In this document: positions 53,901 to 59,107 of the stretch, in pieces
Layout of the letters: every line of letters starts with the position of its first letter
How positions within the stretch are numbered: position 1 is the first letter of the stretch
Translations under genes and position numbers: made by a program
The notes under the pieces: model-generated
Seen by the model: the letters and a program-made list of their open reading frames with translations, nothing else
The model's database searches: none
What the model was told of the DNA's origin: nothing
NCBI GenBank assembly: GCA_965235115.1
Contig: OZ249451.1
Location: 11,346,001-11,410,000 of the forward strand
Source: Laetmonice hystrix
Lineage: Eukaryota
Length of the DNA: 64,000 nucleotides
Direction of reading: 5' to 3'

Positions 53901-56900
53901 GCGAAGTTCTTTAATATTATTTTTCGTCGATGCTGGGTCGCAGATGTCAGTCAATGAAAGACGCTGTAACAATTTACAGTTTACAGGGAAGGAGGTGCCA
54001 CCTGATGGTGATGTTTCGAAGAATGTTCTAACTAAATTTTCTCCTAGCAGAACCCATTCCATCTAATATACTCTTACTTCGGTTTTGACAGAAAACACCT
54101 TTTCTTCAAAATAAATTGGGACCCAAGTTAATTTATTTCTGTCTACTTAATCCATGTTTGTCAGGCAGAGTTTACTTCTGCCTACGAAATAACATCTATT
54201 CCAGGCAAAATTATTATTGTCTTTAACCCTTGACTGCAAAAGGAATGTGTAAGAGAGAATTAAATTTTTTCTGTAAAATACTTTTTTAGGGAGCAAGACA
54301 GAAATTACTTTTTTCTGTAAAATACATTCTATGCAGTTCGTATCAAAAAAAGGTAGTCCTACTTCAAGGGGTTAGCATGCGAACGTTATTGAGATTAATA
54401 ATCTACATGTGGGTGACCAATTAAGAGGAGCTCCTCAGCTTTCCATTGATATCTTTCTTGCATCATGGCCGATTACATTTTTTATTGAAAATGATCAGTT
54501 CAAATCGCCTTTTTCCACTTTGCTGTAACCGGGGAGGAGCTCCTCTTAATTGGTCACCCGCAAGGTCACCCATAAGGTCACCCACAAGGTCACCCACAAG
54601 GTCACCCATAGGGTCACCCACAAGGCCACACACCCATATTCCTATGACCAATACATAGATTTTTACCAAGTGGCATAATTTACATTAAACTTTACTCTTC
54701 TCAGGCTTCAGAGGGGTAATAACCTTTGTATGCCAAACACACTGTAGATCAAACCGCAGCTTCAGTGGTATATGATTATTGATAAAAACAGTGAAACATA
54801 ATACTGGCCACATAACCTTAATCCGCCTGGTAAACACAAGCAGATCGAGATTTGGGCGTCAGGCCAGTCTCATACCAGTCACGTACAGTATAGCCTACTG
54901 TAGGGCGTGTTTAATGTTGACAGCTGCTGCACATTGTGTAGATCTATGGGATCTAGTATATGCAGATGGCACTGGGTGTCACCCGCCACGTATGGATCAT
55001 TACATCATGGGAATGCTACTTCCATGTCTAATAATATACTACGCAGATGTTGGTTATGAATTACAACGTTCCACAGCTATTTACACCCTGAGAGAACAAG
55101 AAGAGGACGAAGAAGTGGATCTAGATTTGACAACGTAGCTTAATGAACACGAATACACATATATCTACATATATAATTTATCAAAACCAAAATAAAAACG
55201 GTATCGATCTTAATTTTTACCCTTTAGATTTTTTTAATATTATTATTATTATTAAGGCTTAATGTGAGGTTAAGCAGCATGGGTGAAAATAAAATATCTT
55301 TCTCTGCCCCTTTAATTCAGTTTGTGTGCGTTGGCGGGAGCCCGCGGCGAATGGAGAAGTTTGCCTACTTCATGCTACAGGAACTCAAGTTGAGTCTCCC
55401 CGCTGGCCAGACGTTGGTCAATATTGCCAAGGCAACCGATCGCTATGCCCTCTACAAGGTGGGCCCCGTCCTTGCCGCCAGTGTAAGTATTTAAGGTTGG
55501 GCCTCAGCTGCATGCCATTCTTGTTAGAGCCACTTTTTAGGCCTACGACCGAAAAGAACCTGCAGTTTTTAAGCAGGGGATTTCGTACGACCGCGGACGA
55601 CTTTCCCCCAGAAATCATGTAGGCCTATGCGGACATGATAGGCGATTGGAGAACCGGTCTTTCAATTCCTCATCCGATCCTCTTCGACAACATAACACCA
55701 TTTTGATAAATATGCAGAAGAGAGGCTGCAGCGCTTTTGTACTATGTGCGCATCCCTTATAGATAGGCCTAAAATATTAAATTTAAATCCTAATATTTCT
55801 TCCAATGACGTAGTTAAATAACGTTGCCTGATTGGTTGAGAAGGGTCTGGGTGTATCACGTGATCTGTCACGTGATCTTACAGCATGGCATGGGGATACC
55901 GTCAATCTCCATCATGCTCCACGAGATCCTCAAGCTCGTCCATCACGCCCACTGCAAGAACGTCCTCTTTCTGCGCATGGGCACTTGCGGGGGACTGGGT
56001 GAGCAGTTGCGCATGCCTGGTTTCCCTCTACGTTGTGTTGATTCCTCAGACAGCTGCGTTTCACAACAATCGTAACCCTGTCGTGCGTAAAAATCCCGAT
56101 AGAAAATACATTGGTGTTTACGATACGACAAGCTAACGACATGTTGTGAAACGCACCCCTGATCATACTGAAAGATGTTGGCTTCAGTTTCGTGTCCTTT
56201 GACGTTCTGCGTTTAGACTAAGATTATTTTAGGCCTAATCATGCATGCGATGGTCGTTCCTTCTTCAATCAGTGTCGATCCAAGTGTAGTAGATCTACAC
56301 ATCATACTATAGATCTCTAGGCCTACCTACTCGCATAGTCTGGGCACCTTTTATCGATTTTAATCGATCTAATAACAACACTATCCTTCACTCTGGTACG
56401 AAAGCCTTAATTGTTCACTGGCACGCCTTTTCTGGGGGCTGATTTTGAGTCACCCGCTTGACTCCTGTTTAAATAACTATTGTAATTTGTCGTATTAATA
56501 GTAATAGTAGTAGGCATAGTAGTAGGCCCTATTAGTACATAATAGAAGTAGGCCTATTACTATTAGTAGTAGTGGAACGTAGTAATGGTAGTGGTACGTA
56601 TATTAGTAGTAGTGGCACTAGTAGTAGTAGTAGTAGGCCTAGTATTAGTAGTAGTAGGCCTAGTAGTAGTAGTAGTAGTCATCTCGAAATATGATGGAAG
56701 CCGTCACAGAACCTCGATAATGCCATCACTCTATGACGTCATAACGACGTCATGAATGACATCAATTGTTTCAGACCCGGGAGAAACTTTGAAACATTTC
56801 TGTTTTGATGTTGTCATTGTTGTTGTTGCTGTTGTTGTTGCTGTTGTGATGATATAATTGTTATCATTTGACCTCAGCATGGAATAGGTACGCCCTCACT

Positions 56901-59107
56901 GTCTGTCATGATGCATGAACTCATAAAGATCTTGTACCACGCTGAGGCTCACGATGTGACTTTCTACCGTATGGGAACGTGTGGCGGAGTGGGTACGTAT
57001 AGACTCTATAGGTCCCTGTTGGCATTCCACTGTGCATCATTGGAAACGCACATTCAGCAGTGTTGGATTTAAAGCCCCAGCCCGTATTTATGACGAGGAA
57101 ATTGTCCTCTACCAGTATGAATCAGCCTTGTCCATTTTCTGTAACCTGGAGTTTAAACAATCAGCAGTTCTTACTTTGAATCCAGGACTAGAGCCCGGCA
57201 CCGTCGTGGTGACAGAGGCTGCCGTGGACGCCCTCCTGCGGCCGCAGTACGAAATAGTAAGTTAGTAAGCGAGAGCGCGCGAGAGAGAGAGAGAAGGGAG
57301 GGAGGAAGGGAGGGAGGGTGTTAATTCTATACCTTTAAATTATAAATGTCATGGAAAAATGCTAATAATGATAGCCTAGGTGGGAGCCTATATCTAGGCT
57401 TATCCCTTAAAGAACATATTTCACCCTTTGATAAATCTTGACAGTCAGGTAGGCCTATCACCCTAAACTTAAGAATCCACCACAGTCTTATACAGGTCAC
57501 ATTCGTCTTATATTGGACTCTGGGCCGAGTTCGCGTGCGTAACTCCAGGAACACTAGTGTTGCTCATGAATATGTTAATGAACCCATGTCACACGAACCG
57601 ACTCGTGTTCCGAGCCAGAGTTTCAATGGTTTCCGGGTCTCTCGATAGGGGCCGCTGGCGCTCCTATCCACCGGTGCCCATTGAGTTTGCCTTGACTGCC
57701 CATATTCGCAATGACTTATGGGAGCTTCGCCATATTGGAACACTAGCGATCCCTGCCAAGGGGGTGGGTTGGTCGTGTTGGACCCAACTAGGTCAAATGA
57801 CGTCACTAGAGCTGCAACACTGGGCAGTTCGCGTGAAACACCACCAGCTCGATTAACCCGAGTCGACCACGCGAACTCGGCCTATAGACCGCTATATGTG
57901 GGCCTATACTGACCTCCTGTGCTCCTGCTTGCAGGCAATCCTCGGTGAAATGGTGCGGCGACCGGCCGTACTGGACAAGCACGTGACTGATGAGTTGGTG
58001 GGTCAGTCCCGGGAGGAGGATGGCTTCAAGGTCCTCCCCGGAAAGACAATGTGTACGCTCGACTTCTACGAGGGTAAGTGTTCGCAGCGGACACCAGGCT
58101 GGCTGGACTTCAATAGGTCTCACCGGCATGTACATGTATATGTTGGTCCTTAGGCCTAGGCCCTATACGGTTACCAGAGGAGAGGGAAAGTTCCGCTGTA
58201 GGCCTATAAAAATTTGTAGGCCTAGGCCTATAGAATCTATGAATCGACTTCTGGGCAAGATGTTCTTTCCTCCTCCATACGAACTTAAAAATAGGCCAAC
58301 ATGCCACATATATAGGGCTATGCCTTAGGCTAAATGTGAATCTTGCTGTGTTATCGTAAGTTTTGGAGTATCTCCCCCCTAAACTGCAATTATGCAATTT
58401 AAGTGTCGCCTGCTCCGCCGCGTGCTACGCCCAAAAGAACCTCAAGGGGGTGCCACCAAAGCGAGGCGGCAATGACGCCGCAGATTTAGGCCAAGTTCGT
58501 TTTTTTTTGTTAGGCAAAGGGTCTTTTACCCCAGTCCTGAGCCCTCTTACCCCGTACTACCCTAGTTTAGATCACAGTGTTATCGTGTTGTTTATGTTTG
58601 GTGTAGGTCAAGGCCGTCTGGACGGCGCGTTCTGTGACTACACGGAACAGGACAAGATGAACTTCCTGAGGAGGGCCTACGACAGCGGCGTCCGAAACAT
58701 TGAGATGGAATCCTTGTGTTTCGCTGCCATGTGCCACCACGCCGGCGTCAAATGTAAAACTACGCCGAGCTTTTATTAGGCTCTTAGAGGCCTGTCTGTC
58801 GTAGCTTATCGTCGGCATAAATTAACTGATAGGTCTATTCATATTATAAACAAGGAAAAGAACTGTAAACCGAATCGGTCAAGTACAAAATTTAGTTCAA
58901 GTTTTAGCCGCTAGTCTCTTTTTTTTCCTGATGACCAGACCAACTTTATTACTTTCTCCTGCAGGTGGCGTTGCCTGTGTGACGCTGCTCGACCGTCTCC
59001 AGGGAGACCAGATCACAGCGCCGCCTGGTGTGTTGAAGCAGTGGGATGAACGCCCGGCCACCATCTTGGCCCGGGTCATCAGAAAACGTCTAGGAATGGA
59101 AGAATAG
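47941..59107 (+). CDS. UPP1: Uridine phosphorylase, UPP1/UPP2 type (~317 aa using one copy of exon 4)
   Basis: Exons 47941-48002, 53777-53891, 55321-55482, [55884-55998 or 56878-56992], 57186-57256, 57935-58073, 58607-58753, 58965-59107 (954 nt). Motifs [92 protein letters not shown]. Confidence 0.96.
49064..49173. mobile_element. Short MITE-like element with 13-bp terminal inverted repeats
   Basis: AATCTTAAGACTG ... CAGTCTTAAGATT. Confidence 0.55.
50668..50960 (+). mobile_element. Degenerate non-LTR (CR1/L2-like) reverse transcriptase C-terminal fragment
   Basis: [11 protein letters not shown]...[20 protein letters not shown], followed after stops and frameshifts by [14 protein letters not shown], typical LINE RT thumb-region motifs. 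Confidence 0.75.
51492..51634. mobile_element. Palindromic fold-back element (MITE-like)
   Basis: ACAAATATGGCACTTGGT...ACCAAGTGCCATATTTGT outer arms; inner AAATTTATGGCAC/GTGCCATAAATTT and CTGATATTGCAC/GTGCAATATCAG around the loop tccgcttcgcgtc. Confidence 0.8.
55884..55998 (+). CDS. UPP1: UPP exon 4a (alternative copy)
   Basis: cag|CAT GGC ATG GGG...GGA CTG G|gtgagc; 115 nt, phase 0 to 1; [38 protein letters not shown]. Confidence 0.92.
56055..56155. mobile_element. Short MITE-like hairpin between UPP exons 4a and 4b
   Basis: 14-bp IR TGCGTTTCACAACA (56055-56068) / TGTTGTGAAACGCA (56142-56155). Confidence 0.55.
56496..56680. repeat. (AGT)n-rich low-complexity tract with several TAGGCCTA palindromes
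   Basis: gtaatagtaatagtagtaggcatagt...agtagtagtagtagtc between UPP exons 4a and 4b. Confidence 0.8.
56878..56992 (+). CDS. UPP1: UPP exon 4b (duplicated alternative copy)
   Basis: cag|CAT GGA ATA GGT...GGA GTG G|gtacgt; 115 nt, phase 0 to 1, no stops; [38 protein letters not shown]. Confidence 0.88.

What the first reader, a model, noticed from the sequence alone, without database searches (positions are those of the whole stretch)
55884..56992. Uridine phosphorylase carries two intact copies of its active-site exon: candidate mutually exclusive splicing
Seen: exons 4a (55884-55998) and 4b (56878-56992) are both 115 nt, phase 0 to 1, stop-free, with canonical AG/GT ends. They encode homologous peptides ([38 protein letters not shown] vs [38 protein letters not shown]). 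Their codons have diverged widely while the HG.G.PS, HE..K and RMGTCGG motifs are kept, which suggests an old duplication with both copies under selection. 115 is not a multiple of 3, so including both or neither shifts the frame; only one-of-two gives protein. Established: in UPP1-type enzymes this segment holds the phosphate-binding RxGT loop. Inference: one gene may make two enzyme variants or heterodimers with different kinetics or substrate range. I cannot check whether this is already described in any taxon.
Basis: partly seen in the sequence, partly recalled or inferred. Interest (0 to 1): 0.8.

Follow-up and report, generated by a model that had tools for sequence, protein, structure and literature searches.

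The report
Alternative active-site exon pair in uridine phosphorylase
The only uridine phosphorylase gene of this annelid-like genome carries two old, intact and selectively maintained versions of the exon that builds part of its active site; only one can be used per transcript, so this is very probably an either/or splice switch, though no RNA data could be reached to show it in use.

Summary
Exons 55884-55998 (4a) and 56878-56992 (4b) are both 115 nt, open, AG/GT-bounded and homologous. Splicing in either one gives an intact uridine phosphorylase frame; using both or neither gives early stops. They are the only two copies in the 627-Mb genome, and the gene is single-copy.

The pair is old. 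The same a-then-b arrangement occurs in a related genomic contig (L020) and in the tubeworms Ridgeia and Lamellibrachia. Each window copy is closer to its own type in other species than to its neighbour, and a tree test rejects a species-specific duplication (p 0.03).

Both copies are under purifying selection. Between the tubeworms dN/dS is 0.035 (a) and 0.042 (b), against 0.10 for the other exons.

Spliced b-type and a-type mRNAs exist in relatives, and two relatives kept only b, so b encodes a working enzyme. Owenia, a nemertean and a mollusc-like contig have only a.

Three positions separate the types, including Met/Ile at a ribose-pocket position. Catalytic Arg and Thr are kept in both.

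Missing: RNA from this species; only DNA runs were reachable.

Verdict: a new member of a known kind (mutually exclusive tandem exons), of moderate interest.

The parts
53777..53891 (+). Exon 2 of the uridine phosphorylase gene (starts in phase 1; encodes ..[20 protein letters not shown]). Exon 1 with the ATG was not located.
   Evidence: AG/GT bounds and frame; aligns to the N-terminal region of UPP proteins.
55321..55482 (+). Exon 3 (162 nt, phase 0 to 0)
   Evidence: Single copy in the genome. 220 library proteins match at E<=0.001; the full-length ones retrieved are uridine phosphorylases.
55884..55998 (+). Exon 4a, the 'a-type' (ancestral-type) version of the active-site exon; 115 nt, phase 0 to 1
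   Evidence: Best PDB matches are uridine phosphorylases, E 3e-13. 79% identical to the Ridgeia a exon.
55999..56877 (+). Intron between 4a and 4b (879 nt). It holds a high-copy MITE-like repeat, a TAG/TAGGCCTA microsatellite and a genome-wide GACGTCAT repeat motif.
56878..56992 (+). Exon 4b, the derived 'b-type' version; 115 nt, phase 0 to 1
   Evidence: PDB matches are uridine phosphorylases, E 6.5e-11. 79% identical to the b exon of L015 and 74% to that of the spliced mRNA L007.
57186..57256 (+). Exon 5 (71 nt); completes the codon left open by exon 4a or 4b
57935..58073 (+). Exon 6 (139 nt)
58607..58753 (+). Exon 7 (147 nt); begins with the QGR motif (equivalents of hUPP1 Gln217/Arg219, the uridine-discriminating residues)
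   Evidence: Pfam PF01048 partial match. Single copy in the genome. Residue roles from PMC2939078.
58965..59107 (+). Exon 8 with the stop codon (59105-59107)

Best explanation
A single-copy uridine phosphorylase gene of an annelid-like animal contains a tandem-duplicated exon 4 that is spliced in a mutually exclusive way. Each mRNA takes 4a or 4b and yields a full-length enzyme. The two enzymes differ in 17 of 38 residues of the strand-helix-strand unit that ends in the phosphate/uracil-contacting R-x-G-T-x-G-G loop.

Shown:
- Both exons are intact, of equal length and phase, and incompatible with the frame when used together or skipped together.
- The pair predates the split of this species from several relatives.
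- Both types are under strong purifying selection.
- The b-type works as the sole exon in some relatives and occurs in spliced mRNAs.

Inferred:
- Both are used in this species.
- Exclusivity is enforced mainly by the reading frame. 115 is not a multiple of 3, so double-inclusion and double-skipping products carry early stops far upstream of the last junction and would go to nonsense-mediated decay. Choice between the two 3' splice sites is probably set by trans-acting factors.
- The functional difference lies in the three type-diagnostic positions: Met/Ile at the position that lines the ribose site in the homologous E. coli PNP, Ile-Val/Leu-Phe-Cys five residues on, and Cys/Ala-Ser before the catalytic strand. 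These would tune substrate handling or stability, not catalysis as such.
For: Sequence and frame:
- Anatomy and reading frame.
- Only two copies of exon 4, and one copy each of exons 3 and 7, in the genome.

Same pair in other genomes:
- The a-then-b pair with AG/GT ends occurs in Ridgeia (115 and 118 nt), Lamellibrachia (115 and 118 nt) and the genomic contig L020 (115 and 115 nt).

Selection:
- Ridgeia versus Lamellibrachia dN/dS is 0.035 for a, 0.042 for b and 0.10 for the other exons pooled.
- Window 4a versus a-orthologues: pN 0.13-0.15 with pS 0.80-0.85. Window 4b versus b-orthologues: pN 0.13-0.21 with pS 0.65-0.93. Cross-type pN is 0.24-0.31.
- AU tests reject 4a+4b as sisters in the window (p 0.031) and in L020 (p 0.012). 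One clade of all b exons is not rejected (p 0.39).
- Terminal branches of win_4a (0.14) and win_4b (0.085) are shorter than that of the rest of the protein (0.33), so neither copy shows relaxation.

Use in relatives:
- Spliced mRNA contigs carry the b-type (L007-L009, L011, L012) and the a-type (L010).
- L015 and L018 carry only b.

Residues:
- 11 a-type and 11 b-type exons share every invariant position, including the catalytic Arg and Thr. They differ without overlap at positions 3, 8 and 24.
- Residue roles come from PMC2939078 and PMC11275124.
Against: - There is no transcript evidence from this species. Both run searches returned only DNA-type contigs, and no splice joints were seen.
- No database cluster held an a/b isoform pair from one species.
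- b-type mRNAs of relatives could come from species that have only b, so they prove competence of b, not alternation.
- Other lineages did lose one copy (L015, L018), so loss of use is possible, and a very recent loss here would be invisible.
- Common origin with the tubeworm pair is not established: an independent duplication there is not rejected (p 0.37).
- No conserved RNA structure or regulatory element that would set the choice was found.
Confidence: 0.78

Rival explanations
1. Only one of the two exons is still used in this species. The other is a recently retired copy that has not yet decayed (a pseudo-exon that is always skipped).
For: Related lineages have reduced the pair to one exon: L015 and L018 keep only b. 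No RNA evidence exists for either junction here.
Against: Both copies keep open frames, canonical AG/GT ends and all invariant family residues. Both have short terminal branches and pN far below a saturated pS against their orthologues. In the b-only loci no remnant of the a exon is detectable, which suggests unused copies vanish quickly.
Confidence: 0.17
2. The second copy serves as a 'poison' exon. It is co-included with the first to create a premature stop and lower enzyme output, and it never contributes protein.
For: Co-inclusion does give a stop inside 4b.
Against: A poison exon needs no protein-level conservation. The b exon has dN/dS 0.04 between tubeworms. It keeps catalytic residues and is the only exon 4 in some relatives and in spliced full-length mRNAs.
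Confidence: 0.03
3. Assembly artefact: the two copies are alleles or haplotigs placed in tandem.
For: None beyond the general possibility.
Against: The copies are only 60% identical in DNA. They lie 879 nt apart, within contigs that run through their unique flanks at single-copy depth in three runs. The same arrangement is seen in three other genomes.
Confidence: 0.01

Closest known systems
coq-2 exons 6a/6e of nematodes, flatworms, annelids and molluscs (Tan et al. 2020, eLife, PMC7434440)
   Same: Two homologous, equal-length, mutually exclusive exons inside a metabolic enzyme. An 'a' form resembles the pan-eukaryotic sequence, and a derived form differs at a few invariant residues in the catalytic core. 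It is found in annelids among others.
   Different: For coq-2 the alternation is shown by RNA-seq and the functional switch (ubiquinone versus rhodoquinone precursor choice) by gene editing. Here neither is shown. The enzyme family and pathway differ (pyrimidine salvage).
Tandem duplicated exon substitution events in general (e.g. Martinez-Gomez et al. 2021/2022, PMC8373072, PMC9741552; Ivanov and Pervouchine 2022, PMC9013439)
   Same: Tandem exon duplication, conserved length and phase, ancient origin, and both copies under selection. The isoforms are identical apart from one homologous segment.
   Different: Those catalogues are human- or vertebrate-centred. I found no paper that links uridine phosphorylase to a duplicated or mutually exclusive exon.
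Vertebrate UPP1 / UPP2 paralogous genes
   Same: Two uridine phosphorylase variants with the same fold and catalytic residues. The window's exon 4 versions both align over their full length to hUPP1 and hUPP2.
   Different: Vertebrates obtain two enzymes by whole-gene duplication, and the two differ along the whole chain. Here one gene varies only 38 residues. Neither window exon is specifically UPP1-like or UPP2-like.
RNA-structure-controlled exon clusters (docking site/selector type: Dscam, 14-3-3 zeta, MRP1; PMC6071210)
   Same: Tandem homologous exons chosen one at a time.
   Different: No docking/selector pairing conserved across species was found. The candidate stems in the window are built from genome-wide repeat motifs, and L020 has none.

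Membership tests
Uridine phosphorylase, eukaryotic UPP type (nucleoside phosphorylase-I superfamily, Pfam PF01048) | Sequence membership in PF01048 / similarity to characterised uridine phosphorylases over the full length | tested here: met
   Single exons score below the Pfam cut-off on their own (14.7 and 22.1 bits against 25.1). The spliced model is 65-72% identical over about 294 residues to proteins that carry PF01048, several of them named uridine phosphorylase. Both exon 4 versions match solved uridine phosphorylases at E 1e-10 to 1e-13.
Uridine phosphorylase, eukaryotic UPP type (nucleoside phosphorylase-I superfamily, Pfam PF01048) | Phosphate-binding Arg and the Thr/Ser of the R-x-G-T-S/C-G-G loop (hUPP1 Arg138, Thr141, Ser142) | tested here: met
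   Both 4a and 4b have R-M-G-T-C-G-G. Arg, Gly, Thr, Gly, Gly are invariant in 22 a/b exons. Residue roles from PMC2939078. The numbering follows from the PDB alignment 3eue 126-163.
Uridine phosphorylase, eukaryotic UPP type (nucleoside phosphorylase-I superfamily, Pfam PF01048) | Uridine-discriminating Gln and Arg (hUPP1 Gln217, Arg219) | tested here: met
   The spliced model reads ..FYEG-Q-G-R-LDG.. across the exon 6/7 junction, aligned with the same motif in UPP homologues. Residue roles from PMC2939078.
Uridine phosphorylase, eukaryotic UPP type (nucleoside phosphorylase-I superfamily, Pfam PF01048) | Enzymatic phosphorolysis of uridine | not testable with these tools
   Needs recombinant protein and an assay.
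Mutually exclusive exons derived from tandem exon duplication | Adjacent homologous exons in one intron-exon series, same strand | tested here: met
   4a and 4b are 879 nt apart, 55% identical in protein, and the only two copies in the genome.
Mutually exclusive exons derived from tandem exon duplication | Same length and phase, with compatible splice sites to the same flanking exons | tested here: met
   Both are 115 nt, phase 0 to 1, with AG/GT ends. Either one joins exon 3 to exon 5 in frame.
Mutually exclusive exons derived from tandem exon duplication | Joint inclusion or joint skipping is non-productive | tested here: met
   Early stops arise in both cases.
Mutually exclusive exons derived from tandem exon duplication | Both copies maintained by purifying selection across species | tested here: met
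   dN/dS is 0.035 (a) and 0.042 (b) between two tubeworms. pN is far below pS for each window copy against its orthologues. The pair is present in four genomes.
Mutually exclusive exons derived from tandem exon duplication | Transcripts of one species that contain one or the other exon, never both | not testable with these tools
   No RNA run holding this gene was returned. The runs laid were genomic. No same-species isoform pair was found in the protein collections.
Docking-site/selector (competing RNA structure) type of exon choice | A conserved intronic docking sequence complementary to a selector next to each variant exon | tested here: not met
   The window's best flanking stem (55764-55776 with 56225-56237, 13 bp) is a motif present 269 times in the genome. 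L020 has no inverted repeat of 12 nt or more across the region, and none is shared with the tubeworms.

The most novel reading that the evidence does not exclude
The a/b switch retunes the nucleoside pocket. Its diagnostic changes are Met to Ile at the ribose-lining position, a changed neighbour on the following helix, and loss of a conserved Cys. One single-copy gene would then give two enzymes with different sugar or base preference (for example uridine versus 2'-deoxyuridine/thymidine) or different redox sensitivity. This would be an annelid counterpart, by splicing, of the vertebrate UPP1/UPP2 gene pair. Some lineages later fixed the derived b form as their only enzyme.
Probability: 0.25. 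Interest if true: 0.6.

Novelty: new member of a known kind. Interest (0 to 1): 0.45.

Why it matters
Mutually exclusive tandem exons are among the few alternative-splicing events with a reliable protein-level function, and few of them sit in the catalytic core of a metabolic enzyme. This one swaps the strand-helix-strand unit that carries phosphate-, ribose- and uracil-contacting residues of the only pyrimidine-salvage phosphorylase in the genome. It therefore offers a natural pair of enzyme variants with three clean diagnostic substitutions to test. It also shows that two public gene models are wrong because the predictor was forced to include both exons: Ridgeia KAK2180534.1 and the Lamellibrachia satsuma 'Uridine phosphorylase 2'. 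Against this, exon pairs of this kind are frequent in this genome (several earlier notes of this scan), and the mechanism is textbook.

Tried and rejected
1. RNA evidence. Two run searches (5.5 kb of the gene; last exon plus 3' flank) returned only three runs of one sample. When laid, these proved to be genomic contigs without splice joints. Earlier notes of this scan say RNA data for this species exist, but my searches did not return them.

2. Same-species isoform pairs in protein collections. Clusters of ten close relatives held no a/b pair. A search with the Ridgeia model found no tubeworm transcripts.

3. A closer relative for a proper dN/dS on the window's own copies. The nearest hit (P0001, 87% in exon 3) lies on a 1.27-Mb contig whose DNA could not be served. 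Contigs of P0104 and P0011 were too short.

4. A GACGTCAT-N3-GACGTCAT motif is shared by the a-b introns of the window and L020 and looked like a conserved regulator. It has 5,633 copies in the genome, partly in satellite-like arrays, so it is a repeat.

5. Competing RNA structures. A 13-bp stem brackets exon 4a and the region folds well (z -5.2). However, the motif is a dispersed repeat, the fold is helped by a MITE hairpin, and nothing comparable exists in L020.

6. Trees of the 38-residue exon and of the rest of the protein are largely unresolved. They can reject within-species sisterhood of a and b. They cannot prove a single origin or place the tubeworm pair.

7. Flanking-intron conservation between the two tubeworms: my crude global alignments gave erratic values and are not used.

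8. Literature. No paper links uridine phosphorylase with mutually exclusive or duplicated exons.
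Full report
OBSERVATION

Window 55884-55998 and 56878-56992 each translate without stops into a 38-residue peptide plus one base. Each is preceded by AG and followed by GT.

I built the surrounding gene model from the sequence:
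- exon 2: 53777-53891
- exon 3: 55321-55482
- exon 4a and exon 4b as above
- exon 5: 57186-57256
- exon 6: 57935-58073
- exon 7: 58607-58753
- exon 8: 58965-59107, with the stop codon

All have canonical splice sites. Exon 1 with the start codon was not found.

With 4a alone or 4b alone the model is an uninterrupted 296-codon frame. With both, a stop arises inside 4b. With neither, a stop arises at the start of exon 5.

In the whole 627-Mb assembly the 4a peptide matches only itself and 4b (E 1.3e-19 and 2.6e-10). Exons 3 and 7 are single-copy. So this is the organism's only uridine phosphorylase gene, and only exon 4 is doubled.

The copies share 69 of 115 bases. Synonymous differences are saturated (pS 0.83) while pN is 0.28.

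WHAT THE GENE IS

Both exon 4 versions align end to end with solved uridine phosphorylases: human UPP1 and UPP2, and the Schistosoma enzyme (E 1e-10 to 3e-13). The spliced model is 65-72% identical to full-length proteins that carry Pfam PF01048, several of them named uridine phosphorylase.

From the alignment to 3eue and the residue roles given in PMC2939078, exon 4 corresponds to hUPP1 residues 108-145. It ends in the R-x-G-T-S/C-G-G loop with Arg138 (phosphate) and Thr141/Ser142 (uracil side). The Q-G-R motif (Gln217/Arg219) spans the exon 6/7 junction.

The best relatives are lophotrochozoan. The closest named ones are annelids, nemerteans and a brachiopod. Earlier notes of this scan on other pieces of this genome also call it an annelid.

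COMPARATIVE EVIDENCE

The public protein models of the tubeworms Ridgeia piscesae and Lamellibrachia satsuma contain, wholly or partly, two copies of the segment. Their genomic loci explain why. Each has an a-type exon of 115 nt and, about 2 kb downstream, a b-type exon of 118 nt, both with AG/GT ends. The gene predictors forced both into one model.

A third genome fragment, L020 (a 1.46-kb genomic contig of a public run, exon 3 81% identical to the window's), has exon 3, an a exon of 115 nt, a b exon of 115 nt and exon 5 in a row, all with canonical ends.

Other loci carry only one version:
- Owenia fusiformis, Lineus longissimus and a mollusc-like contig (L019) have only an a-type exon.
- Two other relatives (L015, L018) have only a b-type exon, and no remnant of a is left in the short intron.

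Spliced mRNA contigs also exist. Metatranscriptome contigs encode complete enzymes with the b-type exon (L007-L009, L011, L012), and one encodes the a-type (L010).

SELECTION AND AGE

Between Ridgeia and Lamellibrachia, Nei-Gojobori dN/dS is 0.035 for the a exon, 0.042 for the b exon and 0.10 for the other exons pooled. In those animals both copies are at least as constrained as the rest of the enzyme. That makes no sense for an exon that is never translated.

For the window's own copies no close relative was available, so dS is saturated, but the pattern is the same:
- 4a against a-type orthologues: pN 0.13-0.15 at pS 0.80-0.85.
- 4b against b-type orthologues: pN 0.13-0.21 at pS 0.65-0.93.
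- Cross-type comparisons: pN 0.24-0.31.

Each copy is thus nearer to its own type in other species than to its neighbour.

A likelihood tree of the 38 residues is poorly resolved. AU tests nevertheless reject 4a and 4b as sisters in the window (p 0.031) and in L020 (p 0.012). A single clade of all b exons is not rejected (p 0.39). An independent duplication in tubeworms is also not rejected (p 0.37).

The terminal branches of the window's 4a and 4b (0.14 and 0.085) are shorter than that of the rest of the protein (0.33). Neither copy shows relaxation.

WHAT DIFFERS BETWEEN THE TWO VERSIONS

I compared 11 a-type and 11 b-type exons.

The invariant positions are the same in both: H1, G2, G4, S7, H13, E14, K17, R31, G33, T34, G36 and G37.

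Three positions differ without overlap:
- Position 3: Met in a, Ile in b.
- Position 8: Ile or Val in a; Leu, Phe or Cys in b.
- Position 24: Cys in a; Ala or Ser in b.

PNP chains of other species align with the start of the exon at residue 62. Position 3 therefore corresponds to E. coli PNP Met64, assuming E. coli PNP shares that numbering. PMC11275124 lists Met64 among the residues of the ribose site. That is a homology inference, not a structure of this enzyme.

MECHANISM

Shown: either exon gives a full enzyme, and both or neither gives early stops.

Inferred: mRNAs with one exon are the productive ones. The others would be removed by nonsense-mediated decay, because the stops lie several junctions upstream of the last exon.

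The 879-nt intron between the copies (237 nt in L020) is too long for steric exclusion. Both introns are ordinary GT-AG.

I looked for competing RNA structures. A 13-bp stem brackets exon 4a, and each 3' splice site sits in a small hairpin. However, the stem motif occurs 269 times in the genome, and nothing comparable is present in L020. I therefore do not claim RNA-structure control.

A paired GACGTCAT motif shared by the a-b introns of the window and L020 turned out to be a genome-wide repeat with 5,633 copies.

WHAT IS MISSING

There is no direct evidence of use in this species. Both run searches gave three runs of one sample. Laid on the gene, they are genomic: contigs run through the introns and no splice joints appear. 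They do confirm both exons at single-copy depth.

No protein cluster held an a/b pair from one species.

b-type mRNAs could stem from b-only species. They therefore prove that b makes a working enzyme, not that it alternates with a.

COMPARISON WITH WHAT IS KNOWN, AND VERDICT

This is the known class of mutually exclusive exons born by tandem exon duplication (PMC9013439, PMC9741552). The nearest functional analogue is coq-2 exons 6a/6e, an active-site exon pair also present in annelids (PMC7434440).

I found no paper that connects uridine phosphorylase with duplicated or mutually exclusive exons.

I rate it a new member of a known kind. The chance that both exons are used alternately in this species is about 0.78. 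The chance that one is a recently retired copy is about 0.17. Interest is moderate. The active-site location and the clean diagnostic residues make it testable, but such exon pairs are common in this genome and the principle is well established.

Noticed in passing
window 56055-56160: MITE-like element in the intron between 4a and 4b. It has perfect 14-nt terminal inverted repeats (56055-56068 / 56142-56155). Summed contig depth is about 29,000 against about 60 for the flanks, so it belongs to a very high-copy family.
   Followed up: partly
window 57520-57880: A second high-copy repeat, in the intron between exons 5 and 6. Summed contig depth is 2,000-8,000, and many contigs break there.
   Followed up: no
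window 56733-56753; L020 558-577: A GACGTCAT-N3-GACGTCAT pair (CRE-like palindromes) lies in the a-b intron of both species. Genome-wide it has 5,633 copies (control 2), many in arrays with a period of roughly 146 nt, so it belongs to a satellite or dispersed repeat family.
   Followed up: yes
window 55855-55878: Two tandem copies of TCACGTGATCT (E-box / CLEAR-like palindrome CACGTG) directly upstream of the 3' splice site of exon 4a. As RNA they form a hairpin of 8 base pairs (-19 kcal/mol with its surroundings, z -2.8) that covers the branch-point/pyrimidine region. A smaller hairpin sits before exon 4b (z -1.9). Meaning unknown.
   Followed up: partly
window 56480-56680: Long TAG-rich microsatellite interspersed with the palindrome TAGGCCTA. 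The motif TAGGCCTAAAATA occurs 269 times in the genome against 6 for the control.
   Followed up: partly
window 18891-19036: Run of 146 N (gap or masked).
   Followed up: no
P0152 (Ridgeia KAK2180534.1) and P0272 (Lamellibrachia satsuma 'Uridine phosphorylase 2'); loci L003, L006: The public gene models include both alternative exons (Ridgeia, via an 18-residue read-through linker) or the a exon plus the tail of the b exon (Lamellibrachia). Both are probably annotation errors caused by the exon pair.
   Followed up: yes
P0151 (Anneissia japonica 'uridine phosphorylase 2-like', 491 aa): The model repeats the whole N-terminal half (about residues 1-190) almost identically. This is a partial tandem gene duplication or an assembly or annotation artefact, unrelated to the single-exon duplication studied here.
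   Followed up: no
L015 3001-3115; L018 10595-10709: Two unnamed relatives (metagenome-derived genomic contigs) have only the derived b-type exon 4. The ancestral-type exon has therefore been lost at least once.
   Followed up: partly
L014 1249-1302: A short second match to the start of exon 7 (18 residues) about 50 nt downstream of the real exon 7 in a relative's contig. It may be a decayed partial exon duplicate.
   Followed up: no
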